Assembly (NCBI GenBank): GCA_964019335.1
Contig: OZ025760.1
Location: 124,001 to 188,000 of the forward strand
From: Diplonema japonicum
Taxonomy: Eukaryota; Protista; Euglenozoa: Diplonemea
Direction: 5' to 3'
Length of the DNA: 64,000 bases
How positions within the stretch are numbered: the first letter of the stretch is position 1; the number at the start of each line of letters is the position of its first letter. This document shows, one piece after another, positions 18,855 to 47,904 of the stretch. The translations under genes and the position numbers were made by a program. The notes under the pieces were generated by a model. It saw nothing but the letters and a program-made list of their open reading frames with translations. It was not told the origin of the DNA and searched no databases.

Positions 18855-18927
18855 CTTTTATTGTCTCCTTTTTTTCCCGTTCACTGTATTGTGGTCAAGG
18901 TGCTTGAGAAATGAGGCAAAACTCAAA

Positions 18928-25624: not shown

Positions 25625-25665
<41 letters not shown>

Positions 25666-29241: not shown

Positions 29242-29443
29242 AGGGCTATGCTGGCATGGAAACGCGTTTCCATGCATTTTTTGAAAAAAAGGGAAACGGA
29301 AACGGAAACGGATACGGAAACGGAAACGTTTCCTTATGTTTCCTTAAGAAGGAAGCCGTTTCCATAAGAATTTTGAAAAGTATGGAAACGGAAACGGGAA
29401 CGGAAACGGAAACGTTTCCACGTTTCCTGCCAGCATAGCCCTA
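29242..29443. mobile_element. hAT-like MITE with GGAAAC repeats
   Basis: TIR AGGGCTATGCTGGCA/TGCCAGCATAGCCCT inside poly-C; relative at 61880-62038. Confidence 0.75.
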
Positions 29444-29885
29444 GGGGGGGTCATAAGGGGGTCGTTATTTGCCCTTTTTCAGGCTCTTCGCCAAGGGCAT
29501 TTTGGGCCCTTAAAAAAACTGTAACCACCTCAAAAGTGCCCACAAATCACCCAAACCCCCGTTTCCCGATGCTTTCCGGCCCCAGAAGTGCCTAGAATCA
29601 TGTTCTAATTTTGGGGCCCCCGTTTGGTACTTTCCCTATGTAATCCTAGGGAACATAAAATAGGGGCCCCTAGGATTACATAGGGAAAGTACCAAACGGG
29701 GGCCCCAAAATTAGAACATGATTCTAGGCACTTCTGGGGTCGGAAAACATCGGGAAACGGGGGTTTGGGTGATTTGTGGGCACTTTTGGGGTGGTTACAG
29801 TTTTTTTAAAGGCCCAAAATGCCCTTGGCGAAGAGCCTGAAAAAGGGCAAAAAGTGGCCCTTTTTAAGGACCATATGACCCCCCC
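29444..29885. mobile_element. foldback MITE with ~200-bp inverted repeats and TA duplication
   Basis: Near-perfect palindrome around a ~15-nt spacer near 29660; TA at 29442-43 and 29886-87. Confidence 0.85.
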
Positions 29886-29930: not shown

Positions 29931-31458
29931 CTACAGAATGGTCTTTGTCGGGTCGTTGATCCGCTTTCGCAAGTCGGCGATCTATTTTTATTATTATTAA
30001 TTTTTATCCTCCTCCCTCCCTCCAACACACACCTTACTGTCTACGTAACTGGCATCAATGGTAACAGTTTTCCCCTTGTATGTTTCCTGCGCAATGAGTT
30101 TTTTTTTTTTATATCATCCATACCGCTTCAAAAGAAATATCCTCAACGATTTTTTCAATCACGGTGACCAGCCGTCTTGCACCGATGTTCTGCATCTCCC
30201 CATTGATGCTCTTAGTGACCGCCGCTACCCGCCGTATCGCGTCCTCAGTAAAGTTCAGACCGACGCCCTCCGTCTTGAGAAGCTCTTGGTTCTGTTTTAT
30301 CTGGTTGAAAGCGGGCTCGGTGAGGATTCGGTAGAAATCGTTTTCGGTCAGATCGGAGAGTTCAACACGGACGGGGAGACGGCCTTGCAGTTCGGCTATC
30401 ATCTCCGAGGGCTTCGCGATGTGGAAGGCACCGGAACAAATGAACAATACGTTGTCGGTTTTAATAGTTGTCCCGTCCTTAAGGGTCACAACACAGCCTT
30501 CGATTAAGGGGAGGAGGTCTTGCTGTACACCTTCTCCTGAAGTGTCAGCGGATCTGTTTTTCTTTGGGGCGACCACCTTGTCGATCTCGTCGATGAATAC
30601 TACTCCGTGGTTCTCTGCTAGCTTCACGGCGTCGAGTTGGATCTGCTTACTGTCGATTAGTTTTTCTAGCTCGTCGTTTATGATTAGTTGCATGGCTTCC
30701 TTGATCTTCGCGGTGAGCTTTTTCGTCTTCCCCTTCTCGTCCTTCCCCTTGTGGTCGCTGAAGATTATCAACCCTTGCATCCTTTCGTCATCCATTTTGA
30801 CTTTTTTGTTCGGCTCTTCCGCAGCAACGGAAAAATCGATTTCTTTTTCGTCAAGCGCGCCTTCAAGAAGCAATGCCTTGTACTTCTCAAGCTCCTCCGG
30901 GTTGTTATCCGGAACGATCTTGCTCAGGATGATTTGAATCGCGGCTTGCTGTGTGTGTGTGTTTTTTTTTTTTTTAAATACTTTTGCATTGTCTTGCTGT
31001 CTTGCTTGAGCGAGTTTTTTAGCTCGTTGGACGGATGCGGTGAAGAGGTCTTCGACTATACTGTCAACGTCTCGACCTTTGAAGCCTACCTCGGTGTACT
31101 TTGTGGCTTCGACCTTTACGAAGGGAGCATCTGTGAGCTTCGCCATTCTCCTTGAAATCTCGGTTTTCCCCACCCCGGTGGGGCCGACCATTAAGATGTT
31201 CTTCGGGTGGATGTCGTCACGGAGGTCCTTATCCTTCAACATAGTTCGCCTCCACCTGTTGCGGAGAGATATCGCGACCGCCCTTTTCGCTGCGTCTTGA
31301 CCTATAATATACTTATCAAGCTCTGTTACCACCGCTCGGGGGATCATGGCTCGCTCAAGAATCTCCTTCTCAAGGTCCCAGTAGGTGGTGGTGGCGATCT
31401 CTGGTGCAGGTTGTGCTGCCGCCTGAATGCATCGCCGCGTAATACCGCGGAGCAACAT
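29931..31458 (-). CDS. hslU: mitochondrial HslU ATPase (4 exons)
   Basis: GPTGVGKT, KVEATKYTEVG, FIDEIDK, QGRLP, GARRL; introns 30949-30981, 30087-30123 and 29982-30032 restore the C-terminus ...DASYVDSK|IADLRKRINDPTKTIL*; N-terminal transit-like peptide. Confidence 0.95.
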
Positions 31459-31620
31459 TTTCTTTTTTTTTCTTCTTTTTTTTTTTGTGTGTGTTCTGTT
31501 TTTAGATTTAATACGCAAAGAAGAAAGAGAGGGGGATGGGGGAAAAGGGGTAATATTACACACTTTTTCCTTTTTTTTTTCCCCCCCCTTTCTCCTCCAT
31601 TTTTCTTTTTTTCTTTTTTT

Positions 31621-32085
31621 TCAAACAAGTTCGTCGCAGTCGTCTTCCACCTTTTGCTCTCGTCCTATTTTTTTTTTTTTTATATTTATTTGTAAAAATA
31701 TAATTACCTGACACCGCCATGTCCCAGTAGTGCCCGCTTCCAAGGGTGTCGAGGTACTTCTTCGCCTTCAGCCCGTCGGTGAAGGTGAGGGATTTGAACT
31801 CTTTCTGCATCTTCCTCTCGGAGTAGCCTTGCCACACGCAGCAGGCGTTGTTCTTGTTGTCCTCGTTTTCAGCCAGTTCGTAGTCGATACGGTGGAGGAG
31901 CAGCCTAGAGAATTTCCGGGTTGGCTTCCTCCCACCGTCAATCATCACCAAGTTGACACCATTTGTTCGTATCAACATCCCTGTTAGGTGCAGCTGCTTG
32001 GCGTTCTCAATAATCTTCCAGATGGCCCTCGCTGAGTGAAGCGCATTTATCCTGTTTTTTTTTTTTTTTTTTAATACCCGCTTTA

Positions 32086-32120
<35 letters not shown>

Positions 32121-33285
32121 GTAAATACTAGACACGGGGTCTTCATTAGCTTCTCGCGTCATCTTTCCTATTATTTTCCGCCTCTTGGCATCCGGGTCGA
32201 GTTTGCGTTCCTTTTTTTTTTTTTTTTTGAAAAAAAAAAAAAAAAAAAAACCTGATTCCGCGCTTCGTGTCTGCCCATTCTCTCTGCCATTTGCGTTCGG
32301 ACAAATCTCTCGATCGTTGTGGGGTCCTATTTTTTTTTTTTTTTTTTAATTGTTCCCTTCCCCCTACCTGCACGGCTTCCTTCCCCATCACCTTCATGAT
32401 ATTTGAGATCTTCACCTTCGGCGGCGGCGGTGCTAAAAGCCCCATCGCGATTTGTTCCTGTTTGTCCTTCTCCCGCTCCACCCTGGTTCGCGTTCGGATC
32501 TTCTTTGCTTCCTTCTTGGTGAGGATAAGTGCCTGCGGCTCTGGGGCTGCTGCAGAGTTCGGCCCCTCTATCGGAACAGGGTGCTCTATATAATGGGTCA
32601 ACACCTTGAACTTAAGCCTCCACTGCAATGCGTCGCTTGTAAGATCATCCCTCACGTCAGAATAGGACTTTGTGAGTAAAATGCTGGCGTCCCACCATTC
32701 CGTATCTGGGACATCGGTGATGTCGCTTTGGAGCTGTTCTTCTGTCAGAACGACAGCTGTTTCAGATGGTTGGATTTGAGGAGCGGACATTTTTAAGTCT
32801 GCGTCTGCAGCTTTCCGTTTTTCTTTGAATTCTTTTCTGGCGTCCATCAGCTTTCTCATTTTCTCGCCTTGTTCGGTGTACTTTCCCGTTTCGCCGAAGA
32901 TCATCCGTTTTCTGTCTTTTCCCTTCATGTGGACTAGTGACTCATCGAAGTAAGCGGACTTGGGTTTGTCGTAAAGGCCTGGTTCGATTTCTTCCTTCTT
33001 AGGGGGCTGCCTTCGTGTGTCGTTTTTCCCCTTCCCCGTCTCGGGTTCCAGTAGCGTGCCGTTTTCGTCGACAAGCCTACCTGAGTCGTCTAAAAAGGCT
33101 TTTATCGGCCTGTTTTGTGCGACCTTTTTCAGCTTGGCGGCGATGTGGTCCATGTGCGTGCTGGGGAGGAGCTCTGTCAAGTCATCCGGTTCAGGATCTG
33201 GGTACACATCCCTGCTCCTCTTTCTAACTTTGTTTGATCCCGTCGACCCGCGGCTTGCAGCACCGCTTTTTCGTGAAAACGACAT
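31621..33285 (-). CDS. PRP3: U4/U6 snRNP protein Prp3 (5 exons)
   Basis: EWWD, YIEHP, LTKKEAKKIR, GLLAPPPPKVKISN; introns 32327-32367, 32211-32251, 32052-32118 and 31665-31707 give EAVQ|DPT..ARNQ|ERKL..IYR|INAL..NAKQLHLTG..HYWDMA. Confidence 0.95.
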
Positions 33286-33390
33286 TTTTTTTTTTTTTTT
33301 TTCCCTTCAAAAATTCAAAAAATTCAAAAAAAAAAAAAAAAAAATGATTGATAGGGTGGGAGACAGGGTTTTTTTTTTTTTTTTTCCTCT

Positions 33391-33891
33391 TCAATCCGTG
33401 TTGCTACGTCTGAGTTTTCGCATTGCTTCTCGTTTCGCCGTTGCTCGGCTCGACGCGGCTTGTTTCAACCGCTCTGTTTTCCCCAGGCCCTTTATTTTGT
33501 CCATAGAGGATGTCAGCCCCGACTCCTTCTTCTTGTTCTTCTTCGCAAGTGGTATTTTTCGTGCTCTGGGGGTGTTGGCCTTGTTCAACGAGGTTCGAAG
33601 TTCGTCCTTCGCCCCCGCGATGGTCCCCCGGGCCGCCTCCTTCACGATGACGTAGTTCCCCACTGTGTTCTGCATACCAGCGTTGTCGTTCCGCACCATC
33701 CCCCTCCCGATGAGGCCTTCCAGGATCGGCTCCAACCACTCTGAGGTCCGCTTGACCGCTGCCTTGGGCAGACACGATTCAAATCGCTTTACAAGAACAC
33801 CCCCGATCGCCTTTTTCGACAGACCTCCTTTGGATTTTGACTGCGCTTCGCTTAAAACCCCCAACACCAGCATCTCTGGTTCAACTTCCAT
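33391..33891 (-). CDS. basic protein with possible linker-histone H1-like winged helix
   Basis: GLSKKAIGG..LEGLIGRGMV followed by a K/R-rich tail; A-tract+AG directly before ATG. Confidence 0.5.
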   Translation of the reverse strand: MEVEPEMLVLGVLSEAQSKSKGGLSKKAIGGVLVKRFESCLPKAAVKRTSEWLEPILEGLIGRGMVRNDNAGMQNTVGNYVIVKEAARGTIAGAKDELRTSLNKANTPRARKIPLAKKNKKKESGLTSSMDKIKGLGKTERLKQAASSRATAKREAMRKLRRSNTD

Positions 33892-34135
33892 CTTTTTTTT
33901 TTTTTTTTTTTTTTCCTTAATATGAGTGTGTGAAGCAATATAATTTTTTTTTTTTTTTTATAAATACATGGGATACAATTTTTTTTTTTTTTTGTTTTAA
34001 CAATATTATTGTCGAGACTAAAAACTAGTTGATGGCAGCGTAATGAGCTATTTTATTAGGTAAAATTCCGCTCGTGCGCACAAACAAAATGGAGCACCAA
34101 ACTAGTTTTTTTTTTTTTTTTTTTTTTTTTTTCTT

Positions 34136-34840
34136 CTACGTGAGAGGGTGCTGCACCTCACTCGCGATCTTTTTCACAACGCGATCAAGCTGCAGGACGA
34201 TGCTGTGTAACAAATTTTGCTGGACTCGTTGGGGTTGGGGTTGGGGTTGGGGTTGGGGTTGGGGTTGGGGTTGGGGTTGGGGTTGGGGTTGGGGTTGGGG
34301 TTGGGGTTGGGGTTGGGGGTTGACCGGTTGCTCCCAAGGCACGCAGGCGGGCGCCGAGAGGACCGACATTGTCAGAGAGGACGCCAGTTGCGCTTGGAGC
34401 TCTTGTTTTTTCGCCTCCGCCTCCCAGTACCGTGCCGTGTAGGCGGCAGAGACGGCTTCTCGATGCCGTTCAGCTTCGGCAATCCGCATTTTCTCCTTCA
34501 AACGGGTGATTTCTTGCTCTTTGCGCACCCTATCCAATTCACGAAGAGATGTTTCCTCTGCGATTCTTCCTTCCAGCCATTGTTTTACGGCTGCTGTGTG
34601 CTCGTCTTGCTGCAGGGACTTTAGTGTGACGGTGGCTCCTGATTCCAGTTCTTCTTTTTCTTCTTCTTCTTCTTCTTCTTCTTCTTCTTCTTCTTCTTCC
34701 TCGTCGTCTTCTTGTAGTGATTGCAGTTCTTTTTCTAAATCCCACACGGATTTTCCGCTTTCGGCATGTTGGTAATATGCCCTCCCCGTTCTTTTGTCGA
34801 ATTTCTCCTTCCACTCCCCAGATGTTAGGGCTTCGTTCAT
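34136..34840 (-). CDS. WW-domain coiled-coil protein with poly-E and (PQ)n
   Basis: WKEKFDKRTGRAYYQHAESGKSVW; start MNEAL follows an A-tract. Confidence 0.8.
   Translation of the reverse strand: MNEALTSGEWKEKFDKRTGRAYYQHAESGKSVWDLEKELQSLQEDDEEEEEEEEEEEEEEEKEELESGATVTLKSLQQDEHTAAVKQWLEGRIAEETSLRELDRVRKEQEITRLKEKMRIAEAERHREAVSAAYTARYWEAEAKKQELQAQLASSLTMSVLSAPACVPWEQPVNPQPQPQPQPQPQPQPQPQPQPQPQPQPQPQRVQQNLLHSIVLQLDRVVKKIASEVQHPLT
34229..34322 (+). repeat. (TTGGGG)n, ~15 units, encoding (PQ)n
   Basis: Direct reading. Confidence 0.95.
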
Positions 34841-35390
34841 TTTTTTTTTTTTTTCCGCTTTTCTCCTTCTCCTTCTCCTTTGATCGGGTGTTTGAAGAAG
34901 GGAGGGGAAAAAAAAAGAGAAAAAAAAAAACTGGTTTTCCTTTTTTTTTTTTTTATAATTTTTTTTTTTCCCCCGTTCGCCATTTTTAAATGGGCAAGTG
35001 CGGCGAGAAGCCCAAAAGGGAAGGAAAAACAAAATGGCGGGGGTGGGGGTGGGGGGTATTTTTAATAAAGGAGTGCGAGTAGTCAAAAAATAAAAATGCC
35101 TTAATGTGAGGGAAGAGAAAAGAAGAGAAAAAAAAGAAGAAAAAAAAGAGCCCTCGGTTTAACCTACTGTTCTCCCACCTTGCTTACCCACAGTCCTTTT
35201 TTTGTGAACGAAATTAATTTTTTTTTTTTTTACCAACCCCTCCTCTCTTTTTTTTTGGGGAAAAAAACAACGTTTTCAGTAAACATCTTTTGGGGTGTGT
35301 TTGGCAATGTTCAGTAACTCCGAAAAACCATAATTGGCAAAACGACCAAAAAAAAAAAAAAACACTACAAAAAAATTCACTGAAACCGTT

Positions 35391-35435
<45 letters not shown>

Positions 35436-35542
35436 GAAAAACCACACACTTGAAAAAAAAAATTCTACTCAAAAAAAAAACTTTTTTTTTCCTTTTTTTT
35501 TTTGTTTCTCTCTCTTTTAAAAAAAAAAAAAAAAAAAAAAAA

Positions 35543-35605
35543 TTAAATCACCGCACTAACTTTCCGCGTCCACGCTGCATCGTTGAAAATCGGGAGGATA
35601 CTGTA

Positions 35606-35641
<36 letters not shown>

Positions 35642-36845
35642 CAAAGCTATAAATTTTCTTCCCCCTCCCTCACCCCCCTATACCAAGCAATCAAAGTCAC
35701 CCCAATCGTCAGCCTGATTGATTCCGTCCCGGCGCAAAGAAACAAAACAGCGGAAAGAATCACGGTGATGGAGTCGGTGGTACCCTGCTTCCGACGGCTC
35801 CCGGAATCAATACATATATCGTACACCGCCGAACAAGAAACAGCGATCGCAAGCATGTACACCGTAAGCTGGAACGCGAAAGAGAAAGGCGACCTGTTAA
35901 TAAGAGCCGGGAGTTCAATCCAAACAACTTCCTTCGCAAGCATAAGCAACGCCGCGACAATCGACGGCAGGTATCTGGTCAACTGTTCAGGGTCGGCAAT
36001 TCCATTTAACATCCAACCGTCGTCGTGCATCAACAACAGCAAAGGTGACATTAACACAGGCAATCCCGGTCCAGCATCTCCGAAGTCCGAACGAAGAATT
36101 AACAGCGAAACATATGCTTGCAACACACAAATATTACCCAACAACCCAAACTGCGATCCGTCCCCAACGGCATTTCGCATACTGTCCACTTTTTTCATGT
36201 CGCGTGATCGTAAGGCTGGACGGTCCGTCAGCTTCAGCTTCAACAACGCCGCGAGTATCAAATTAATCCCGATCGACAACGACAATATACTATTGGACTT
36301 CTGATTCGCCGTTTCAAACTTCAACGTTGCATCAAAACTCTCAGGTATGCTCCAATGGGCGTCGAGAAGTGCTGCAAGAAGCGTAACCAGTGTCCCAGTG
36401 TAGAATCCCCAGATTGTGTTCGAATCTTCTCTTTGAGCGGAGACCGAGAAATGTGTGAAGTCAACGCATAGAACTGTAAGCCCGAATACAAGTGTGATGT
36501 ACAGGTAGGCACTCCACCCTGCGTAAGGTATGAACAGTGCTGTGAATGAGATCCCACATCCTGTTGATATAATGGTCCACCAGGCCACGCGGAGCCCTGA
36601 GTTTTCCGGCATTTGAACGACTCCTAAGAGTGTGATGCCCACTGCTGTTATGGACAGCAGGCCGAGCGCGGCTCCCCAAGACGGGGCTTGGTACAAATCT
36701 ATGTCGTTTTCTTCTTCTGAAGCGCCTTCCACCATCGGGTCCATCAACGCGATCAAACTCCCAATCACCATGAACGCTTGGCAGATCTTCCTCGCCCTTC
36801 GTTGCGATGTGGGCAGAACATGCAGCAACGGGAACTGCAGGACAC

Positions 36846-36876
<31 letters not shown>

Positions 36877-37430
36877 ATATATACCCTGCGTAGATGGCGA
36901 CGAGACCCAACATCCGTCCGTAACCAAGGTCACTGTCGCCGGTTGTTAGCTCGCCCAGTGCGAGGACGATGGAGTTTTTCGACAGAATGGCGACCGTACA
37001 GCAGCAAACTAGGTACATGTTCACCACCGGTACCAGGCTTGACCTCCTCTTCTTCTCCTTCTTCTCGTAGTAAAGCTGCAGGAGGATCGTTATCATCGCT
37101 GTGCACATGACGTACGCAAGCATCAAAGCGTGCATCCCGTAAGAGTGGTCGTAAAGATCCGAGTCCCGTTCAGGCAGCGTGCTGACCATGCAGAAGAGGT
37201 AGAACTTTGATAGGTACAGACCCGTTAGTACCTTTTTTTTTTTTTTTTTTTTTTTGTTCCTTTTTTAAAATATATATATACCGAAGCCTGTCCTTTCTCC
37301 AGCTTCTTGTTTCGGTACAACTTCTGCACGAAGAACAGCCCCCAGACGGACGTCCCTATCACACACGTGAAGGGGTAGAGGTTCTCTGGTTGGGAGTACA
37401 GGACGTGCTCGATGATCGTAAGGGCAACCA

Positions 37431-37468
<38 letters not shown>

Positions 37469-39196
37469 CTTTCTTCCCTCTTTCCTCACTCACACACCTG
37501 CTGCAGCAAACTGATGTAAAACGCAGGCTGGTTTTCAACCAACCCCAACGGGAAGATGCAGCACTGGATGAGGTACAGCCACAAGATATAAACAGACATC
37601 CTGACAATTTTTTTTTTTCTCTTTTTTTTTTTTTAAAAACCAAAACACATACTGAGGTAACGAGATATGCTCGGCCCCGCCGAAAATCGCAAGATCCACG
37701 TTCAGAAACGAGAACGATTTGTACATCCACCAGGTAAGCAAAATAAATGTAGTGGACACGAAAATCAGGTAATTGTTCAGATTCCTCGGCTCCAAGCAGA
37801 ACGACGTCAAGCAAGCAGCAGACAACGCGGAACAACAAATCACAAACCTCGGCATCCCCGCCACATAGCTGAAAGCAATCGCAGCACAGATACTGAAGAA
37901 CAGCACACCGGTCCATTTCACAGCACGGTCCATGCCGTTCTGAGGCATTTCTGCAAGCTGCACAGCCCAATAAACAACAAGCGACCCACAATATCCGGAA
38001 ATCGCAATTAAAATTACGTTGTAAGGCGGTGTGACCCCTGCAAGAAGATGCGCGAAACGACCGAACGCCACCCTGTAGATGACCCAGTGAAGCACTATTA
38101 GATACGACCCAAGCAAAATCGTGTTTCTTGTGTATGCGGCAGCACTGTCTTTTTTTGTCTCGGACCGCTGCCCGTAAGGATCAGCGTACGCGAACCACAA
38201 CGACTCCTTCGCATCGTAAAACAGGTACAGAAGAGGAATGGCAACAAGCGTCCCGATGTTTAACAGGTGCAGCATTGAAAGATGCTGCTTGTGGTTGATA
38301 AGAATCTCGGTCAACGCAGGGAGAACCACAGTGGCAAACGTGAACAAACCGGGTTCTAATAACCCGTTGATGTATTCCTCATCCTTGGCCTCCGGTGCCA
38401 ATGCTTCCTTAAACGCGGACTTTCTCTTCGTGTAAAAGATTCTGTGCAAACCTATCATGACAATCGCCAATCCAAATGGTGCGAGCTGCGACCCGATCAA
38501 GCTCAAACAGGTGCTGAACAACAATGGTAAACACACGATCGGGGACAACCCCAGGAGGACCCTTTCCGCAGCCAAAGCGATCTCGGGCGACTGAATCTGA
38601 AGCCATTTAAACTGTATCGTTGAAAAAACCCCCAATATAAAGAGGTACAACGACAGATCTAAAAGAATAAACGACGACAGCCACGTGTTCGTCAGCACGT
38701 TTATATTCGTGAAGTACATCCCGACCCATACTGATATGACACATGCCCATACACTCACCAAAGCAAGGTTTTTTGCGTTTGTATAGTCAAGGATGTATGT
38801 TGCAATGATACCCACGAGTAAAGTTGCCAAAACGTGTTTCCCGCTGACGGCCAATGCGGGAAGTAAGCATGAGAGCACTAAGGCGCTGAGCTCAGGGATG
38901 AAATTGATGTATCCTGGGGTGAATTCTAATTTGAAGGAGCCTTCGCTTCTTTCCATTTTTCCTCGGCTTGAGAAGTACGGATCGTCGGTGGCGGCTGTTC
39001 TTCTATGTACGTTGCTGAAGGCTCGGTCGTCTTCTTTTGATTCCATTACTACTTCTCTCGGGGGTTCCCCCACGACTTCCTTCTGTGCCACCACGAGGTG
39101 CTGGATGGCCTGGCTGATTTCTTGTGCCAAGATTTTCTTGTCTTGGTCCCGGTCTTGTTCCAGCGGGACTTGTTCGTACTGAGGTTGACCCGACAT
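35543..39196 (-). CDS. NO EXINE FORMATION 1 (NEF1)-like multi-pass membrane protein (6 exons)
   Basis: IQFKWLQIQSPEIALAAERVL resembles plant NEF1 LQFKWLQLENPSIVVALERLL; introns 37601-37652, 37432-37497, 37232-37281, 36845-36884 and 35601-35683 (last donor less certain). Confidence 0.8.
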
Positions 39197-39265
39197 ATTC
39201 TTTAAAAAAAAAAAAAAGTGGGGGGGTAAACAAACAAGGGTCTTTGGCCCTGCCCTGTTGTTGTG

Positions 39266-39298
<33 letters not shown>

Positions 39299-39424
39299 AG
39301 AAGAATAGAATATAAAAAAGAAATAAAATACTTAAGGAAAAAATGGGGAAACTGATCTAACGCAAGATTTTTTTTTTTTTTTTTTTTTTTTTTAGATAGC
39401 CCCTTTAAAAAAATAGAAAAATGC

Positions 39425-39457
<33 letters not shown>

Positions 39458-40006
39458 CCTTTCTTTTTTTCTTCTCTTTCTCTTTTTTCTTTTTTTTCTC
39501 TTTTTGTGCGATTGCAAGAACCGTTTTCAGAATTATTATTATTGCCCCTTTAAAAAAAAATCTCTACCGGTTGGTACTACAGTAATTAAGGGCCGCTTTT
39601 GCAAAGACTACCCCCCCCCAAAAAAAACCCCTGAGCTGAGATTATCTGATGATTTTTTTTCCCTCCTTATTTTCTTGTATCTTAAAAATAAGTTTTAAAA
39701 AAAAAATCTTTAAACAACTCCTATTCTTTCCTTTTCTTTTCCTTTTTCAAATAATGAGCCATTTTTCCCCTCCCTCCCCCCTTTTTTTTTCGAAGACCGA
39801 AAAACTTTTTCCCCCTCCGTAGGTTGTAAAAAAAAATCTTTTTTTGGTCCCTCTAAAAAAAATATCATTCCTCCCCCCCCTCCCCTTTTTTTTTCTTTCA
39901 TTCTTTTAATTAAGGTTAAATAATATTTAATATGACGGAGTACATGGGGAGAGGGAAACAACAACACTCTTTTCCTTCCAAAAAAAAAAAAAAAAAAAAA
40001 GAGGAG

Positions 40007-40521
40007 GAAAAGAAAAGAAAAGAAAAGAAAAGAAAAGAAAAGAAAAGAAAAGAAAAGAAAAGAAAAGAAAAGAAAAGAAAAGAAAAGAAAAGAAAAGAAA
40101 AGAAAAGAAAAGAAAAGAAAAGAAAAGAAAAGAAAAGAAAAGAAAAGAAAAGAAAAGAAAAGAAAAGAAAAGAAAAGAAAAGAAAAGAAAAGAAAAGAAA
40201 AGAAAAGAAAAGAAAAGAAAAGAAAAGAAAAGAAAAGAAAAGAAAAGAAAAGAAAAGAAAAGAAAAGAAAAGAAAAGAAAAGAAAAGAAAAGAAAAGAAA
40301 AGAAAAGAAAAGAAAAGAAAAGAAAAGAAAAGAAAAGAAAAGAAAAGAAAAGAAAAGAAAAGAAAAGAAAAGAAAAGAAAAGAAAAGAAAAGAAAAGAAA
40401 AGAAAAGAAAAGAAAAGAAAAGAAAAGAAAAGAAAAGAAAAGAAAAGAAAAGAAAAGAAAAGAAAAGAAAAGAAAAGAAAAGAAAAGAAAAGAAAAGAAA
40501 AGAAAAGAAAAGAAAAGAAAA
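40007..40521 (+). repeat. (GAAAA)n microsatellite, ~100 units
   Basis: Perfect pentamer array. Confidence 0.98.
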
Positions 40522-40544
40522 AAAACCAACCACCACCCCCCCCC

Positions 40545-40608
<64 letters not shown>

Positions 40609-40609
40609 C

Positions 40610-43600
40610 TTACCAACCCTTTCCGTTACTTGTAACACACAAACTAGCATGCCGCGATATTGCAGGCTTGGGTTCGATATCTGGGAATCTGAAGGAGCCC
40701 GCAGACCGATTCCGCTGTAGCCGGCTGTTGTGTGGGCTCTCGTCGAGCACGGGTACGGTGAGATTTCCGTTGGACCTCTTTAGCTCAGTGACAAGAGCGG
40801 AAAATGCAGGCAGTACCTCTCGCAGCTTCTTCTCAATCAAGTCGATTTTTCGAGATTGCGCTCGGAGCTCTGACCACACCTCACTGTACTTGGTGTCGGG
40901 GATGTTTGGTTTCACGCTCGGCTGCTTTCTCGCAGCGTCTTCTTGCTCCTCCTGCTGCGTCCCCTTATCCTGCAAACTAATCGCCTTATTGCTTGGAAAG
41001 AACGACAAATCTAACCCTTGCATTCTGTTCCACACAAATGATTCCTGCCCGGTGAACTCCGACTGATCCTTTGTACGAAGATGATGGATGAAATAAATGT
41101 AAAACCACATATTGTGGTCCCGCTTTATGTGGCACTCGAATCCCATCGCATGTCTGTCGAACTCGGAAGATTCAATACCTTTTTTAAAAAAAAAAATCTT
41201 TTTTTTTATATTGAAACATACCGCATATAAAGCATTTTGTTCGGATTTCCTCCTCCACCTTCTGCTTCTCGGCACGAAGCTCCGCGAAGGTGTCGATGAT
41301 GATCCCGAAAATTATGTTCAAGAGGATCACGATGACCACCACATAGAACGAGAACTCGAATGCCATTCGCAGCCCGTACATCGTGTCGATTGCTCCATCA
41401 CCGTCAACGTCGAATTTCGGGGGGTGCTGCGTTTTTTTTTTTTTTTTTTTTTTTTTTCTATACCAACAGCTCCGAGATGCCCCCTGCGGCAATTCCCTTG
41501 AACAAGGTGTGGACAAACGTTCTGAAAATAGTAGCTGTGGTCTCCCCTGAGTCTTGGTAAGACGACCTGAAAAACATGAACCCCGCGACCGCAAAATGGT
41601 ACACTATAATAACCGCCAGCAAACCCGTCAATAAGAGCGACTTCCCGTTCTTCGTGATCGACCTTATAACCGACTGAAGAATCGGACTGTTCGCCACGAT
41701 CGAAAACAGCTGACTCGTGAAAAACAGCGGCGACACAAAGAGCCCCAACACTGAGCACAACACCATAAAGCACTGCGCTAAAAACTTCGCGTCCTTCAAA
41801 AGACACAGCAACACTTCCGCTGAATGGAAATCACCTTCCAATCTCGAGCTTTCAGGCTGACTGCTATCCTGTTGAACTTGCTGCGAGAAGATAGGCCGCA
41901 TAGGATGCGGGGAGCCCCTCCGTGCTCTGGGTGAAATCCCATTCCGCCCTTTTGTCTGCATCAACCCCGGTATCTCATAACTGAAATCATCGTCTGCTAG
42001 GCAAGGCGACGCAAAGTTCGGTGATGGTGTCGATTCCGAGCTTGCACCCTGATCGGGGGGGAGTAACTTATTTGGTTCGTGTTTGTCTCTGTCCTTGCTG
42101 ATTTTCCCGGTGATCTCCGGTGATGTGATGGGGCTTGGTCTGTAATCCGACATTCTACGCGGGGTTCTCACCGCCGGGGAGGCAACCCCTGAAGAGTACG
42201 TCCTGTACCCAAGACCTTCGTCGTCTTCATTGTCACTGCACCGCATCAACGGGTCCGGCTTCGGTACACGACGTAGCCCACGCAGAGTGTTGCTGAGGAC
42301 TCCCTCCTTGCGGGATGATGTTAGCGAAGATCCCAGTTTTTCGGTACAACTGCTGAAAAGTATATCTTTTGCTTCGAGCTGGGGAGACGTGTCAAAGTGG
42401 TAACGGGTGTCTAACCGCAATGGAGATGCTACCATTTTGTTCCGACCGTTGGGAACATTCAGTCTTGCTGGCTGCATGTTGGGTGATTCCATGAACGCGC
42501 TGCTTCCTCCTGACACCCTTCGTTGGAACCCACTGTTTGGCGTCGCACGCTTCGGAGCACGCGGGGACCCGTACACACCCATGTCCGATCCTTTCCGGCT
42601 ACCCATAGTTACATTAACGGAAGGCGGTGCGGGTATACACCCCATTGCAGGCGACTCCGGGTACGGATCTTCAGCTTGTCGAAGCTGGAGAAGAACCTCC
42701 GGCGACGTCGATCTTCGAGACCAACCTGCTGTGTTGCTGGACTTCAAAAACTTATGCGCCATGATAGGCCCCTCGGAGACCGCCTTGTTGACGGCAGACG
42801 CCGTGGTAAGCAACAGCTGCAGCGTCCCGAAGAAGTACAAGAGGAAGATGAGAAGCACGGAGTGCTCTTGCTCGATCATCGCAGCGTTGAGGAACGACAG
42901 GAGAAGCGAGATGTACACCGTGCAAGAATATATCCCCCAAGAGTGCCGGTGGATGTACACAGCTACAATGGTTCCGATGGCAGCCACGTAACTTTTTTCC
43001 GCCCATTGTTGGAAGCCTGTCGACAACGCCTTCCTGGAAAAGTGGCTGTCGTTGTACTTCATCTCAAAGAGCGCATCATCAGCCATCGAGTAAAAGCTCA
43101 ATATCCTAGCAGTCGGTGTGTCTCTATCCACAGACCACAGAATCCTTTTCTTTGTGGTTTCGGAGAGGTTTAGACAAAGCTCCGGGACTCTGAAGTAAAC
43201 CCGTTGAAGGCGGCCTTCTCTCACCGCGATTTCTATGCGACCTGTCATGGCCTGGTAGTACATGAAACCCTTTTCGACCCTCATGAAGAATCGGTTGTCC
43301 GCCAGGATGTGCTGTTCGTCGAAGGCGGACAGTGTTTCCATGAAGATGTAGAGGTTGAACCCGAGCTCAAGTGCCGTGTCGTGTTCCTCGTTCCCACGTT
43401 TTCTGTTGGCCCAGCAGGCGTCCAGTGCGGACCCGATCAGTAACATTAAATCCGCGTTCTGCATCAGCATGTTGGGAACCTTGTTGTCCTCGCAGCCCTC
43501 CAACAACGAGAGCAGTGTGATGGTGGCCGCGTTCTGCATTTCATCGGTTTGCTCACGTGTTATCCTGCCTGCAGTGGCACCCTCGTACTCCAGCTTCAGT

Positions 43601-46600
43601 ACTGTTGAAACTTCCTTCGCAAGGTGCGCGTTGACCAAAGCTTCTTGATTCGTTTTGCAAGGCCCTTGACAGTACTCCGTAAGTGAGTTGAAACATTGCA
43701 GAAGTAAGTCGAACAAAACTGGTTCGTAACAAGCTGGTGGGACGGATATCACGGATTTTAAAACAAGCAGGCTCTCCTTGACGAGGTCTACGGAATGCAG
43801 GTTGTCGGGTTGCGAATGTATGTAGTTCTGCAGCTCGTTGTTGTGTCCCTCGCAGAAGAGCTGAAGAAGTCTTAACGTTTTCGTAACGCATTGTATGGTA
43901 GAAGCAGGGCCGATCCTCGCGGGGGAGAGCGGGAATCTGTGCGACATCCCTGTTTGATCTGTTAACCACCGTCGCTTCTCCTTTACCTCAACGTCCTTCA
44001 GCTCCACTACGGCGGAGTGCAGCTTCTGTCTGATGCATTGAAAGAAAGCCTCGTCGCTGATTGAATCGAAGTACGACATCAACTGTGCCTGCACTTGCAG
44101 GTTCCCCCCTTCCAGCATTGCTATACCAAAGGCCAACGCGTAGTTAACAATAGCTTCATCGGGGGCTTCAATAAGGGACGACATGAGCAGCGTGCAGCCC
44201 AGTCTGTCAAGGTTGCACTGCATTTGACGCATGGCTTCGTCGCCTCCTTTATCTTTCTCCGATGTGATTAGATGAGTGAAGACCCTCAGAATGAAGCAGA
44301 CGCTGAACGTGTCGTCGAAAGAGTTCGAGAAGTGCGATACCAAGTGCCGTACGATGACGCCTGAGGTGTTCTGAGTTGATGCGAGCTGTGCTGGTCGGTG
44401 TAGGACGTCTTGCTTGATGATGCTGGACAGTCCCACAACCGCCGCGTTCTCCCTCCCGTCCGCTTCCGGAGGGAAGTCGCCGTACCCTGCACACAATGGG
44501 TCGTCGACTAGCGATTTGCAAAGCAGTCTGAACGCGACTTTAAACAACTCGTCGTCACCTTGGTACATGCTGACCTCTAGTAGAACCTTCGATAAGGCAT
44601 GGCTGCCCTGCAGCACCCCTGCATGGGTTTCGACAGAATCAACCCACTTCGACATCGCCTGGCCCTGCCGTGCTGTGCATTCCAAAAGCTGGCACGCTAC
44701 TATTTTGCACCCCGTCACCGTTTTGTTGTTTTCCGACTCGCGGAAATTCGCATCTTCATGTCCTTGTTTCGGCAGTGCTTCCACCACAGCCTGCTGCCAC
44801 ATACCAGTGGCGGCGTCCTTCTTCTTCGAGAAGTACCCGACGAGCTTCGCGGCGCCGCTTGTAAGGGTGCAATGGCTTGCCTCGTCCATTGTGTCTGTGG
44901 ACGGGTCAAGCAGCTGGACGAGGATTGGAGCGAGCTTCTGAAGCTCCTGTTGGCTGAACCGGTTGTTCTCCACAAGGAGGAGGAGACATTTCAGAGTCTC
45001 GCGCACCTGTTCGTTTCTGCCCACCTTCGGGGAGCACAACGATGTGTTCCGCTTGATATCGTTGCACAGCAGCCTTTTCCATCTCGAGACCAAATCGCCA
45101 GGATCCTTCTTCCCACTGGGTGCCAGGTACAGCATCCTGGCAAGGGCAAGGAACCGGGTACGAACGGCGTCTCCAAGCGCAGTGGTGTGGGAGCTGGTTG
45201 GGTTGGAGAGAAGCCCTTTTTCCAGCGCGACTAAAATGTGGCCACGGGGGATCAGGTCAGAGACGTTTTCCCTGCATTCGGGGTTCCCAGCGCAGAGAGC
45301 CGCCATCAGATTCAACTGCCGTTCGTAGTACTTTACAGACCGATAGGTCCCGGTGGCTATGAAGTTTTGCATTGGAACCCACTGTTGGTTCTGCCAGTCG
45401 CTGATATCGTGGTGAGTCGTGTCGCCTAGCGGAGTCACCAGGTCGAATATGGTTGAGGTGTGGAAGTTCAACGACGCATCGCTGGAGTGCTCGGGGAGGA
45501 TCTCGACTTCTAAAGCGCCTTTGTTCAAACGGGTTCGGTGCAACAACCGGCCGGGCTGGTTCTGCAACCGGAGAACCTCAGTGCATACTAACGTTTGCGT
45601 GCGTGGGATGCCTTCACCGCTTGTCTCGCACACCGCAGACAGAAGATTGAGGTAAGACGGACTCCGCCCGTAGGAAGGAACGAGGTTAACAAACCGCTTG
45701 ATTGTCGCGTCTTTAAGTTGCGACAGAACCCGCTCGTGGTCATGCACAATGGCGTGGACGGTATCGGCAGCATTGAGCCGGTACCCGGACTGGGTTTCGA
45801 AGAAACTGATGTAAGGGACGAGGTCGTTGGCAGCCTGTTCGAACCCAGCGACTAGCAAGGTGATGAGCCTGTATCCCAATCGGAGGATGACAGAGAGCGA
45901 GTCATAGTTCCGGACCGAGTCGAGGGTGATGTTCTTGTTGGTGAAGGGAGCAGACACTAGTTTGTACACCATGTGGTGAACGCCCTGCTCGTACAGAATT
46001 TTCTGACCCTTTTTGACAGGCCGAAGCTTTTTCACGAACAGCTCCTCGGCTTCCCTCACTGCTGTTGCAGTTGACGGAGGGATGTTCGGCGGTCGGACGC
46101 CCTCAAGGATCACCTCCCCCGAGACGAATGCTATCAGATCTGAGAGGACCGTTATGATAGATGAGATCACCGCTTTGAGGTTTGCACGCCACGCGGATCG
46201 CTTGAGCTGGTCCAAGGTGTTCTTGATGAGCTTGTCGGACCCAAGACACGAAATGGCTTCGGTTGTTTCTATAACAGAAAGCTCCCTTCGTTTGTAGAGC
46301 TTTCGGTTGTACATCCAAGAGACGGACGATATATTCTGCTGTTTGCTTAAACCCGAGGTGGTACGGTGTAGAATCGGTTTAGGGCGTTGCTGCCTGCAGC
46401 TGCACAAAACTGCAGCGGAGAGAACCGTCATAACAGCGGAGCTTTCTTCTGAAGTGACGTCTTCCTCGTCACAGTTCCGGCATATAATCAACGGGGCGAT
46501 GGCGGCCAGCAATTCTTCCCGGAGCGAGGTCGAACCAGAGGGCGACGAAACATCATCTAGCGAATCTGCGAATGATTGTGGAGACAAGTCCGACGCAACT

Positions 46601-47904
46601 TCATTCCAAACAGCGTAAGTCGATTTTGATTCGAATATCTCAGAAGCAGCTTTTAAAAGGGGAAGCATAGACCCGACACGTTGCAGTGCTGGTGCGATAC
46701 CGTACTCCGCATGGTGTATGGCGAAGAGGTCTTCATATATAGGACGCGGTGCAACGGCCGCAGTGTACCCAGCACCCTCACCAACATCGGAGGTGCAATG
46801 GACCCACGTCCCGCTCTTCACCATTTCAAGACGAGCATACCCGCCTGCCTTCATAACCTCGTCCTGGTTGTCTAAAGGATGAAAGCTGATCAAAGTGTCA
46901 TCGATGTAGTCTTCGGTACCATGAACCAGCGACGACACAAGCCCTAATCGTTGCCTTTGAACAGCGTGCGATGAAGGTCCATTCTGTGCCATGTTAGCAT
47001 GGCAGCACAGGTATTTACCTGTTGCAAGATGCCGTAATCGGTAAGCTGCTTGTGCACCTCCGAGCGATGCCGCGGCGATGGTGCCTCCTGTAACAATCTG
47101 ATTCGATTCGATAATCCACACAGCTCCAGATGGTTGCGGGACGTCTCGTACAGAGTACGTTGCCTTCGGTGGTTTTACAGGTGTGAAGGATACTGATGAC
47201 GGGCCGCCTTCGAAAAACGCTTCTTTTTCTTTGTGAAATAGAACAACTGGATCGCCTACCCGCAGAGGGGCAACTCCTGTCGTGTGGTCTGGCTGGCTTG
47301 CTTGTATGTCGAAAGCCTCGATTGCCCATACTGTTTCTGAGGATGGTTTTTGCGACAACCCCACACCCCTCCCTGTTGGACGACACGCTCCGTTAGGAAG
47401 AGGCGCGAAAGATATTCTTGAAAAAGACGGTCCCACCGATAAGTATTTCGACGTAGAGACGGATTCGAGAAGGAGTTGTTCCCCAGCTCGAACAACCTCT
47501 CCTTCCTCGCGGATTCTTCCCTTTGGGAGGAGGCGGAAGGTTTCTTCTAAAGAAACACTAGCGCCTTCGATCCTCTCGGCTAGGCAAAGCCCGACTTGAT
47601 CGCTGTCTTCTTCATGTGGGACAACTTGTAGGACTTGATTGGCTATGACGGAGCTGAGTCTGACGCATGAACCATATGTCACTGATCGTACCCCGTCCAC
47701 GGCTTGGTCCTCCACGGGGCGCAGGATGCTGAAGACGCACCTTTCGAACCCTTTCGGTATCGTCACCATGCCCACCCCTTCCAGCTGGTGCATTTCGTGA
47801 ACCGTGACGGTTGGGTAGCACTTCCCGTTCATGAAGTTCCCGCAGAGATGCCCCTCCGTCAGTATCGGGGACAGCGTTATCTCGTCACCATATTGAAGCT
47901 CCAT
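40610..47904 (-). CDS. ITPR: inositol 1,4,5-trisphosphate/ryanodine receptor family Ca2+ channel (3 exons)
   Basis: MIR-like YRLRHLATGKYL, LQLFCEGHN, LTEYCQGPC, LNIIFGIIIDTFAELR, CFICG, HNMW; introns 41427-41463 and 41179-41221. Confidence 0.93.

What the first reader, a model, noticed from the sequence alone, without database searches (positions are those of the whole stretch)
29982..41463. Tiny GT-AG introns with a poly(A) tract replacing the polypyrimidine tract
Seen: 14 introns of 33-83 nt (HslU 33/37/51; Prp3 41/41/67/43; NEF1-like 52/66/50/40/83; IP3R 37/43). Removing them restores conserved protein (e.g. Prp3 EAVQ|DPT, IP3R CFICG|IE, HslU C-terminus); the last NEF1 intron is less certain. 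All are GT...AG with an A run or A-rich tract before the acceptor (AAAAAG, AAATAG, AAACAG, AAACGCAG), e.g. GTATAG-A26-CGCAG. None has a pyrimidine tract next to the AG or an obvious branch consensus. Established: U2AF65 normally reads a U-rich tract and U2AF35 prefers YAG. Inference: this lineage may define 3' splice sites through an A-tract, using a divergent U2AF, a PABP-like factor or a length-ruler with redundant branch adenosines.
Basis: partly seen in the sequence, partly recalled or inferred. Interest (0 to 1): 0.9.

Follow-up and report, generated by a model that had tools for sequence, protein, structure and literature searches.

The report
Poly(A)-bodied micro-introns of Diplonema japonicum
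The 14 tiny A-rich introns are real spliceosomal introns of the marine protist Diplonema japonicum, but this oddity was published for the species in 2025, and other introns in the same genome carry T-, C- or CA-rich bodies, so the A-tract is common rather than required.

Summary
Seven junctions are skipped exactly by RNA-like contigs. Six more are fixed by residue-level colinearity with a full-length homolog or with solved IP3R structures. One (I1) rests on reading frame alone.

The introns are 57.5% A, against 28.6% A in sense-strand intergenic DNA. The last 20 nt average 79% A, against 33% in 1,035 intergenic pseudo-introns (p=6e-9), so the stated refutation test fails.

The genome is Diplonema japonicum: a U2AF65 exon is 345/345 residues identical to that species' protein. 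[quoted passage not shown]

The A-tract is not the rule. Of 23 micro-introns in another 200-kb region, 5 are A-type, 13 pyrimidine-type and 5 mixed.

The shared features are:
- a length of about 43 nt;
- a G-poor (2-3% G) stretch before the acceptor;
- an AG-free zone of about 30 nt, mostly ending in CAG.

U2 snRNA is canonical. U2AF65 RRM2 lacks its RNP aromatic residues, but this holds in all diplonemids sampled. The scan flagged the same thing in at least 8 other windows of this genome. How these introns are recognised remains untested.

The parts
29931..31458 (-). HslU-type AAA+ ATPase gene (4 exons, 3 introns)
   Evidence: Start, stop and exon phases. Pfam AAA_2, AAA and ClpB_D2-small.
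30949..30981 (-). Intron H1, 33 nt: GTATTT-A14-(CA)5G
   Evidence: RNA-like contig X1 record 2 spans it with 44 reference letters against 11 record letters, so 33 nt are removed.
30087..30123 (-). Intron H2, 37 nt: GTATGG..A12..CTCATTGCGCAG
   Evidence: Exact 37-nt skip with CT..AC ends on the + strand in X1 (table 5).
29982..30032 (-). Intron H3, 51 nt: G/T-rich 5' half, A/T-rich 3' half, ends AAAAATAG
   Evidence: Exact 51-nt skip in X1 (table 5).
31621..33285 (-). Prp3 (U4/U6 snRNP protein) gene (5 exons, 4 introns)
   Evidence: PF08572 PRP3 at 9e-45; PF06544 Prp3_C at 1e-19.
32327..32367 (-). Intron P1, 41 nt: GTAGGGGGAAGGG..A18TAG
   Evidence: X1 record 4 and X2 record 6 cover 322 reference letters with 173 record letters, so 149 nt are removed, equal to P1+P2+P3.
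32211..32251 (-). Intron P2, 41 nt: G-T21-C-A17-G
   Evidence: as for P1.
32052..32118 (-). Intron P3, 67 nt: (GT)n..A18CAG
   Evidence: The 67-nt version fits both the phase and the 149-nt total removed.
31665..31707 (-). Intron P4, 43 nt: GTAATT..A14TAG
   Evidence: The loose end of X1 record 4 at 31707 reads on into the exon 5 sequence (table 7).
35543..39196 (-). NEF1-like multi-pass membrane protein gene (6 exons, 5 introns); no Pfam match
   Evidence: Full-length homologs P0002 (1141 aa) and P0004 (1104 aa).
37601..37652 (-). Intron N1, 52 nt
   Evidence: Exon 1 ends at P0002 residue 532 and exon 2 starts at 534, with the split codon at 533.
37432..37497 (-). Intron N2, 66 nt: GTGTGTGAGTGAGG..A36G
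   Evidence: There is an in-frame TGA inside it. The exon 2 and exon 3 alignments to P0002 leave only a 3-residue offset.
37232..37281 (-). Intron N3, 50 nt: GTATATATATATTTT..A23G
   Evidence: Exon 3 ends at P0002 residue 620 and exon 4 starts at 621.
36845..36884 (-). Intron N4, 40 nt: GTATATAT-A27-TACAG
   Evidence: Exon 4 ends at P0002 residue 735 and exon 5 starts at 737, with a split codon between.
35601..35683 (-).
   Evidence: Exon 5 ends at P0002 residue 1122. The 18-aa exon 6 aligns to residues 1125-1141, the homolog's C-terminus, at 47% identity.
40610..47904 (-). IP3 receptor gene (3 exons, 2 introns near the 3' end)
   Evidence: RIH, RIH_assoc, MIR, Ins145_P3_rec, Ion_trans.
41427..41463 (-). 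Intron I1, 37 nt: GTATAG-A26-CGCAG
   Evidence: Frame evidence only. There is an in-frame TAG at intron bases 4-6, and removal restores the frame of the conserved pore-helix exon. No junction-level support.
41179..41221 (-). Intron I2, 43 nt: GTATGTTTCAATAT-A9-G-A-T11-A6-G
   Evidence: Exon 2 ends on ITPR2 residue 2565 (..TCFIC). Residue 2 of exon 3 aligns to 2568, so residue 1 falls at 2567 and the split codon G at 2566.

Best explanation
These are ordinary U2-type (major spliceosome) GT-AG micro-introns of Diplonema japonicum. This species has a median intron length of about 41-43 nt, and the stretch before the 3' splice site does not have to be a pyrimidine tract.

What the introns share:
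- a GTATG-like donor;
- a short length;
- a 3' stretch that is almost free of G and free of AG for about 30 nt;
- an acceptor that is mostly CAG.

Within that constraint the body is low-complexity filler. It is most strikingly A(n), but also T(n), C(n), CA-rich or mixed.

Inferred mechanism. The intron is recognised as a unit (intron definition). U2 docks on a weakly specified branch adenosine, and an A-run offers many of these. The first AG downstream is used as the acceptor. The A-run is therefore tolerated, and perhaps mildly favoured, but it is not a required recognition signal.

Shown here: the introns are real, the A enrichment is real, the A-tract is not obligatory, the U2 snRNA is canonical, and a U2AF65 ortholog is present. 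Inferred: branch-site choice, the first-AG rule, and the role of U2AF.
For: Reality of the introns:
- RNA-like contigs skip 7 of 7 tested junctions exactly.
- Exon-by-exon colinearity with the 1141-aa homolog P0002 fixes N1-N5.
- ITPR2 structures fix I2.
- Frames are open throughout.

A enrichment: (p=6e-9 against the intergenic background).

Species: a U2AF65 exon is 345/345 residues identical to EukProt EP01064 Diplonema japonicum.

Prior description: PMC12621601 reports for this species a 41-nt median, (G)/GTATG, CAG, A as the commonest base in the PPT region, 'atypical poly(A) tracts', U2AF1/2 present, and YTRAY in 13.9% of introns.

A-tract not required:
- 23 curated micro-introns in C12:400001-600000 are 5 A-type, 13 pyrimidine-type and 5 mixed. 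T-type 25633-25675 and A-type 25915-25958 are 240 nt apart, flanking a single 264-nt open exon.
- The U2AF65 gene has introns of mixed, C/A-rich and T8-ending types, validated by the transcript-derived protein P0009.

Shared constraint:
- G is 2-3% in the last 12 nt in both sets. In C12 the last 12 nt are A 42, C 32, T 23, G 2% against a noncoding background of 27/23/29/21 (chi-square p=6e-18).
- The median AG-free zone is 30 nt (window) and 34 nt (C12).
- A-runs end a median of 5 nt from the AG; T-runs end a median of 25 nt away (p=0.0014).

Machinery: U2 snRNA scores 139 bits with an intact GUAGUA. U2AF65 has a canonical RRM1.
Against: - The two regions differ sharply in A-type share: 12/14 against 5/23 (Fisher p=2e-4). 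A pure 'any filler will do' model does not explain this.
- A-runs hug the acceptor while T-runs stay away from it.
- A roughly 1.4-kb TE-bearing intron in the U2AF65 gene also ends A22CAG. Both of these points hint that A next to the AG is more than neutral filler.
- Genome-wide, GTATG..A10..AG occurs 2214 times against 1096 for its reversed control. The T10 version occurs 250 against 179, and the Y10 version 1600 against 1353.
- No branch points, lariats or protein-RNA contacts were observed. The run type of X1 and X2 is only guessed to be RNA.
- The C12 set is small and hand-curated from open-reading-frame adjacency.
Confidence: 0.7

Rival explanations
1. The A-tract is itself the 3' splice-site signal, bound by a retargeted U2AF65 or by another A-binding (PABP-like) factor that takes the place of pyrimidine-tract recognition.
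For: - A is the commonest base at nearly every position from -25 to -4.
- A-runs end a median of 5 nt from the AG, while T-runs sit a median of 25 nt away.
- A 1.4-kb intron also ends A22CAG.
- The GTATG..A10..AG pattern occurs at twice its reversed control, 2214 against 1096.
- U2AF65 RRM2 has lost the RNP1 and RNP2 aromatic residues.
Against: - 13 of 23 micro-introns in a second region are pyrimidine-type with no A-run, and 5 are mixed.
- The RRM2 change is shared by all diplonemid orthologs aligned. PMC12621601 reports C-rich tracts for the other diplonemid species it studied, including Rhynchopus humris, which is in the alignment.
- RRM1 keeps canonical RNP motifs.
- 11 of 13 genes in the window keep long pyrimidine runs followed by AG upstream of the start codon, the expected SL acceptor signal. 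Pyrimidine-tract reading is therefore probably still in use.
Confidence: 0.13
2. The bias is a discrimination device. In an organism that adds a spliced leader at pyrimidine-tract + AG sites, U-runs directly upstream of an internal AG would attract SL trans-splicing. Selection therefore pushes U-runs away from cis acceptors, leaving A- or A/C-rich sequence there.
For: - Pyrimidine runs of 10-39 nt followed by AG lie within about 160 nt upstream of 11 of 13 start codons.
- In introns, T-runs of 8 nt or more end a median of 25 nt from the AG, against 5 nt for A-runs.
- Intergenic sense-strand A-runs and T-runs are about equal: 61 against 66 runs of 6 nt or more in the window, and 244 against 289 runs of 8 nt or more in C12. 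The intron asymmetry is therefore not simple mutational bias.
- Other notes of this scan report SL trans-splicing in this genome.
Against:
- Several cis introns do end in short pyrimidine runs next to the AG: C12 25633-25675 ends ..CTTTTTTTTCTTAG, the fourth U2AF65 intron ends ..T8CAG, and I2 has a T11 run 7 nt from the AG.
- Euglena uses the same C-rich tract for both introns and outrons (PMC11170887).
Confidence: 0.12
3. The gaps are not introns at all. They could be assembly errors in homopolymers, pseudogene frameshifts, or sequence absent from a relative's DNA rather than removed from RNA.
For: - X1 and X2 are only guessed to be RNA and are 95-97% identical to the window rather than identical.
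- Homopolymers are error-prone in long-read assemblies.
Against: - Seven exact GT..AG-bounded skips occur in two runs, while contigs identical to the window retain the sequences.
- Six further junctions fit homologs to the residue.
- The same class of introns is removed in the D. japonicum transcriptome protein P0009.
- PMC12621601 reports RT-PCR validation of such introns in this species.
Confidence: 0.02

Closest known systems
Canonical introns of Diplonema japonicum as described in 'Splice site diversity and abundance of noncanonical introns in diplonemids', RNA 2025;31:1826 (PMC12621601)
   Same: Same species, by 345/345 identity of a U2AF65 exon. Same length class (41 nt there, 43 nt here), same GTATG donor and CAG acceptor. 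[quoted passage not shown]
   Different: The paper gives only a logo-level remark. This report adds exact examples and a background test. It also shows that A-type, pyrimidine-type and mixed introns coexist, that G and AG exclusion is the shared feature, that A-runs abut the AG while T-runs do not, and how the U2AF65 RRM2 has diverged.
Pyrimidine-tract-independent 3' splice-site choice in Saccharomyces cerevisiae (first AG downstream of the branch point); from my own knowledge, not tested here
   Same: The acceptor can be chosen by distance or first-AG rule without a strong pyrimidine tract. The AG-free zones of about 30 nt seen here fit such a rule.
   Different: Yeast has a rigid UACUAAC branch site. 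Here YTRAY is present in only 6 of 37 introns, although U2 keeps GUAGUA.
Human ultra-short, G-rich introns with truncated pyrimidine tracts that use SPF45/RBM17 instead of U2AF (from my own knowledge; the cited library hit PMC8594467 concerns SPF45 complexes)
   Same: Short introns, G-rich 5' parts and weak or absent pyrimidine tracts, giving a precedent for U2AF-independent recognition of short introns.
   Different: The human cases do not carry poly(A) bodies. No SPF45 ortholog was sought here.
C-rich pyrimidine tracts of Euglena gracilis introns and outrons (PMC11170887)
   Same: Another euglenozoan whose tract composition departs from the U-rich norm, with a CAG acceptor.
   Different: It is still a pyrimidine tract and is shared by cis and trans acceptors. 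In the window the cis introns are A-rich, while the presumed SL acceptors are pyrimidine-rich.
Giardia/Trichomonas introns with a fused branch-site and acceptor motif (ACTAACACACAG) (PMC2483917 in the library list; details from my own knowledge)
   Same: Many D. japonicum introns end in ACACAG or CACAG, and H1 ends in (CA)5G.
   Different: There is no conserved CTAAC in front of the CA-rich end. The genome is intron-rich, not intron-poor.

Membership tests
U2-type (major) spliceosomal GT-AG introns | GT at the 5' end and AG at the 3' end | tested here: met
   14 of 14 in the window, 23 of 23 in C12, and 4 of 4 in the U2AF65 gene.
U2-type (major) spliceosomal GT-AG introns | Precise removal from the mature transcript | tested here: met
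   7 junctions by spliced RNA-like contigs. 6 junctions by residue-level colinearity. I1 by frame only.
U2-type (major) spliceosomal GT-AG introns | U2 snRNA with a branch-site-binding sequence encoded in the genome | tested here: met
   At least 7 U2 genes at about 139 bits with 5' ..AAGUGUAGUAUCUGUUC.. intact.
U2-type (major) spliceosomal GT-AG introns | Branch adenosine and lariat formation | not testable with these tools
   No lariat reads are available. YTRAY occurs in 1 of 14 and 5 of 23 introns.
U2-type (major) spliceosomal GT-AG introns | Pyrimidine tract between branch site and AG (typical of the class but not universal) | tested here: not met
   Pyrimidines average 19% of the last 20 nt in the 14 introns. 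The feature is met in 13 of 23 introns elsewhere in the genome.
A-rich-3'ss micro-introns of D. japonicum (PMC12621601) | Organism is D. japonicum | tested here: met
   A U2AF65 exon is 345/345 residues identical to EP01064_Diplonema_japonicum_P035732. Another follow-up in this scan reached the same species.
A-rich-3'ss micro-introns of D. japonicum (PMC12621601) | Median length about 41 nt, (G)/GTATG donor, CAG acceptor | tested here: met
   The median is 43 nt in both sets. GTA occurs in 30 of 37 and G at +5 in 26 of 37. C at -3 occurs in 25 of 37. In the window alone the donor is looser: GTATG in 3 of 14.
A-rich-3'ss micro-introns of D. japonicum (PMC12621601) | A is the most abundant base in the 20 nt before the acceptor | tested here: met
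   The window averages 79% A in the last 20 nt. In the pooled 37 introns A is the top base at every position from -25 to -4 except -5.
Euglenid-type nonconventional introns | Non-GT-AG borders with base-paired intron ends | tested here: not met
   All borders are GT-AG. Base pairing of the ends was not examined.
U12-type (minor) introns | /RTATCCTT donor and TCCTTAAC branch site | tested here: not met
   The donors are GTATG, GTATA, GTGTG and similar, with no ATCCTT. PMC10161547 reports no U12-type snRNAs in the related P. papillatum.

The most novel reading that the evidence does not exclude
A-runs abutting the AG are a functional 3' splice-site element in Diplonema. They could be an array of redundant branch adenosines, or the binding site of a factor other than canonical U2AF65. 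Either way they would let the cell tell cis-intron acceptors from the pyrimidine-tract + AG acceptors used for spliced-leader trans-splicing. The regional difference in intron type (12/14 against 5/23 A-type) would then reflect a regulated or evolving switch rather than noise.
Probability: 0.15. Interest if true: 0.75.

Novelty: already known. Interest (0 to 1): 0.38.

Why it matters
A purine homopolymer in the place of the pyrimidine tract runs against the textbook picture of 3' splice-site recognition by U2AF65.

For this species it has been in print since December 2025, though only as a logo-level remark, with no mechanism and no test against background.

This check adds a constraint on any mechanism. 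The same spliceosome, with a canonical U2 snRNA and a U2AF65 whose second RRM has lost its RNA-stacking residues across the whole clade, removes 40-nt introns filled with A, T, C or CA. The invariant features are the absence of G and AG, not the presence of A.

D. japonicum is therefore a convenient natural system for asking how much sequence a minimal intron really needs. It may also show how cis- and SL trans-splicing acceptors are kept apart. It is not a new kind of intron.

Tried and rejected
- A home-made intron scanner (dicodon coding score on both flanks plus a read-through stop) was too noisy: it gave many false long 'introns' inside coding sequence. I abandoned it for ORF adjacency plus frame-checked curation.
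- The minimal-length bridging rule picked spurious short GT..AG pairs inside overlapping ORFs and was not used for statistics.
The second sample is therefore one region, and the share of A-type introns genome-wide is not measured.
- The pattern counts are crude. Matches overlap, the A pattern makes its own AG, and most pyrimidine-type introns fail the 'run within 6 nt of the AG' condition. They cannot give a ratio of types.
- The SF1 helix-hairpin domain PF16275 gave no hit in the genome, but the controls gave none either, so this says nothing.
- The rest of the window was read for more introns. The other genes look intronless, and 1-25 kb is retroelement-rich.
- A replication-type strand bias was considered as the cause of the regional difference. 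It was set aside because sense-strand intergenic A- and T-runs are about equal in both regions.
- Every search and comparison was done exon by exon by reference, and frame continuity was checked by arithmetic.
- Read laying was given 3,401 letters.

Full report
WHAT IS THERE

The window is eukaryotic nuclear DNA rich in homopolymers. It holds 65 A-runs and 76 T-runs of 8 nt or more on the + strand. From about 26 kb to 64 kb it carries a head-to-tail array of genes on the minus strand. The first 25 kb are mostly retroelement copies.

The third Prp3 intron is 67 nt. Every exon stays open in the phase handed over by the previous one, from start codon to stop, in HslU, Prp3, the NEF1-like gene and the 3' end of the IP3 receptor gene. 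Pfam confirms the identities of HslU (AAA_2), Prp3 (PRP3, Prp3_C) and the IP3R (RIH, RIH_assoc, MIR, Ion_trans). The NEF1-like protein has no Pfam match.

ARE THEY REALLY SPLICED OUT?

I laid four public runs on window 29950-33350.
- Contigs of two runs guessed to be RNA (X1, X2; 95-97% identical to the window, so from a close relative or another strain) skip H3 (51 nt) and H2 (37 nt) exactly, with CT..AC ends on the + strand.
- They bridge H1 with 33 nt missing.
- In both runs they bridge P1+P2+P3 with 149 nt missing (41+41+67).
- They read from 31707 straight into Prp3 exon 5, which removes P4.
- Contigs of two runs identical to the window keep the introns.

For the NEF1-like gene, an exhaustive HMMER search with exon 5 found full-length homologs. 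Exon-by-exon BLASTP against the 1141-aa P0002 places the junctions at:
- 532|534 (N1);
- 620|621 (N3);
- 735|737 (N4);
- 1122|1124 (N5);
- within three residues for N2.

The 18-residue last exon aligns to the homolog's very C-terminus.

For IP3R, exon 2 ends on ITPR2 residue 2565 (..TCFIC) and exon 3 starts at 2567. The split glycine codon falls between them. Only I1 rests on frame alone. All comparisons were made exon by exon.

IS THE A-TRACT MORE THAN BACKGROUND?

Yes.
- The 14 introns are 57.5% A and 3.4% C. The sense strand of the 12 intergenic spacers of the same cluster (9.5 kb) is 28.6% A and 32.7% T.
- A-runs of 6 nt or more cover 41.5% of intron bases, against 8.4% of spacer bases. 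T-runs cover 4.7% against 8.5%.
- The A fraction of the last 20 nt averages 0.79. In 1,035 GT..AG pseudo-introns of 33-83 nt cut from the spacers it averages 0.33 (Mann-Whitney p=6e-9).

WHICH ORGANISM, AND IS THIS KNOWN?

Notes from other windows of this genome mention spliced-leader trans-splicing and polycistron-like arrays. That pointed to Euglenozoa.

The U2AF65 gene of the assembly (contig C19) has a 345-residue exon. It is identical in all 345 residues to EukProt EP01064_Diplonema_japonicum_P035732. The D. ambulator ortholog is about 83% identical. Another follow-up of this scan reached the same species independently.

The paper 'Splice site diversity and abundance of noncanonical introns in diplonemids' (RNA 2025;31:1826, PMC12621601) reports for D. 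japonicum:
- 10,131 RNA-supported introns, 98.3% of them GT-AG;
- a median length of 41 nt;
- a (G)/GTATG donor and a CAG acceptor;
- YTRAY in 13.9% of introns;
- U2AF1/2 present.

At least eight other first-stage notes of this scan flag the same thing on other pieces of the genome.

IS THE A-TRACT THE RULE?

No. I fetched 200 kb of another contig (C12:400001-600000, genes on the + strand). I collected micro-introns without regard to their composition. The steps were:
- find adjacent codon-model-positive ORFs;
- find frame-compatible GT..AG pairs;
- check by frame that both flanks are long and open.

Of 23 introns (median 43 nt), 5 are A-type (at least 60% A in the last 20 nt), 13 are pyrimidine-type and 5 are mixed. 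The window has 12 A-type and 2 mixed (Fisher p=2e-4). Examples from C12:
- G-T-A-T17-CC-A7-C-T8-CTTAG (25633-25675), only 240 nt upstream of GTATGGGAAAAT-A13-..-A10-CACAG (25915-25958), the two flanking one short exon;
- a C10 intron (30354-30391);
- CA-rich ends such as ..CCACATCCACAG.

The U2AF65 gene's own four introns, validated by the transcript-derived P0009, are:
- a 37-nt intron with an A-rich end;
- a 36-nt C/A-rich intron;
- a roughly 1.4-kb intron that carries a retroelement fragment and ends A22CAG;
- a 39-nt intron ending T8CAG.

Genome-wide pattern counts show that A-run introns are very common. GTATG..A10..AG occurs 2214 times against 1096 for the reversed control. The T10 version occurs 250 against 179, and the Y10 version 1600 against 1353. 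For the reasons given under 'tried and rejected', these counts cannot give the ratio of types.

WHAT THE INTRONS SHARE

Pooled over the 37 introns:
- the donor is GTA in 30 of 37, with G at +5 in 26 of 37;
- position -3 is C in 25 of 37;
- A is the top base at every position from -25 to -4 except -5.

G is nearly absent from the last 12 nt, at 3% in the window and 2% in C12. There the composition is A 42, C 32, T 23, G 2%, against a noncoding background of 27/23/29/21 (p=6e-18).

The stretch before the acceptor is free of AG for a median of 30 nt (window) and 34 nt (C12), so the acceptor is usually the first AG after the first dozen bases. A-runs of 8 nt or more end a median of 5 nt from the AG. 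T-runs end a median of 25 nt away (p=0.0014). YTRAY occurs in 1 of 14 and 5 of 23 introns.

THE MACHINERY

The genome has at least seven U2 snRNA genes at about 139 bits. They carry the canonical ..GUGUAGUAUCUGUUC.. branch-binding region.

The U2AF65 ortholog has an R/E-rich N-terminus and an RRM1 with canonical RNP2 (RLYVGNV) and RNP1 (GFAFVEL). In RRM2, RNP2 reads KLVMSGF and RNP1 reads SKACCVFEF, against KLFIGGL and SKGYAFCEY in the human protein. The UHM carries an insertion of about 100 residues.

The loss of the RRM2 aromatic residues is shared by all diplonemid orthologs aligned: Diplonema, Rhynchopus, Flectonema, Hemistasia and unnamed ones. It may relate to the generally weak tracts of diplonemids. 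It cannot explain a feature peculiar to D. japonicum.

In the window, 11 of 13 genes have a pyrimidine run of 10-39 nt followed by AG within about 160 nt upstream of the start codon, and 8 of 13 have an A-run between that AG and the ATG. By analogy with kinetoplastids these are the SL acceptor sites. No SL junction was seen here.

READING

These are ordinary major-spliceosome micro-introns of D. japonicum. The region before the acceptor must be short, G-free and AG-free. It may otherwise be A, C or U, and homopolymer-prone noncoding DNA fills it mostly with A-runs.

I infer intron definition: a loosely specified branch adenosine, of which an A-run offers many, and use of the first downstream AG.

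Three observations keep open the possibility that A next to the AG is favoured for a reason:
- A-runs hug the acceptor while T-runs avoid it;
- a long intron also ends in A22CAG;
- the two regions differ sharply in A-type share.

One such reason would be to avoid capture by the SL trans-splicing machinery. That is the most novel reading not excluded, and I give it about 15%.

LIMITS

- Only one extra region could be sampled.
- The C12 set is small and hand-curated.
- The run type of X1 and X2 is a guess.
- No branch points or protein-RNA contacts were observed.

Noticed in passing
window 12/14 A-type against G000:C12:400001-600000 5/23 A-type: The share of A-type micro-introns differs strongly between two regions of the same genome (Fisher p=2e-4). 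Sense-strand intergenic A- and T-runs are about equal in both regions. No explanation was found.
   Followed up: partly
L005 1516-2664 and L029 926-1667 (G000:C19:430973-434211): U2AF65 ortholog. RRM1 is canonical. RRM2 lacks the RNP1 and RNP2 aromatic residues (KLVMSGF; SKACCVFEF) in all diplonemid orthologs aligned. The UHM carries an insertion of about 100 aa. The gene has a roughly 1.4-kb intron holding a retroelement fragment on the opposite strand and ending A22CAG.
   Followed up: partly
window 29459-29860: A perfect-looking hairpin element: two 193-nt arms, 96% complementary, 16 nt apart. It lies between the HslU gene and a GGAAACG-type short tandem repeat block at about 29290-29440. 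A related 'ctagggctat..ggaaac..tttccgtttcc' sequence recurs near 61900-62040. MITE-like.
   Followed up: partly
window 33286-33302, 33892-33914, 34841-34854, 48729-48749, 63534-63549 (minus strand): A-runs of 14-22 nt sit directly against the start codon of five genes (Prp3, the 166-aa protein, the WW protein, the MSS51_C protein and the CARME methyltransferase). Their 5' UTRs would therefore be largely poly(A).
   Followed up: no
window about 40020-40610: Directly after the IP3R stop codon, on the sense strand, lie a T-run of about 57 nt and then about 540 bp of (TTTTC)n microsatellite.
   Followed up: no
window about 34230-34335 (minus strand): (CCCCAA)17 lies inside the coding sequence of a WW-domain protein and is read as (QP)n. 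The unit equals the ciliate telomere repeat, presumably by coincidence.
   Followed up: no
window 19200-24830 (minus) and 14128-16905 (plus): Non-LTR retrotransposon copies with RVT_1 domains. The minus-strand copy is broken by frameshifts and stops. Shorter related fragments recur at about 7413 and about 10212, and the same element family sits inside the U2AF65 intron on C19.
   Followed up: partly
window 18300-18860 (minus strand): Protein-kinase-like fragment with in-frame stops and a frameshift. It looks like a pseudogene next to a T-run of about 60 nt.
   Followed up: no
window 56690-60307 (minus strand): Intronless 1,206-aa gene with AMP-binding and NAD_binding_4 (terminal reductase) domains. 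It is a carboxylate-reductase or NRPS-like enzyme sitting in the protist gene array.
   Followed up: partly
L002 1501-1693 and 2468-2772 (G000:C12:800970-802241): A U2 snRNA gene lies about 775 nt upstream of an SRP RNA gene on the same strand. U2 occurs in at least seven near-identical copies on different contigs.
   Followed up: no
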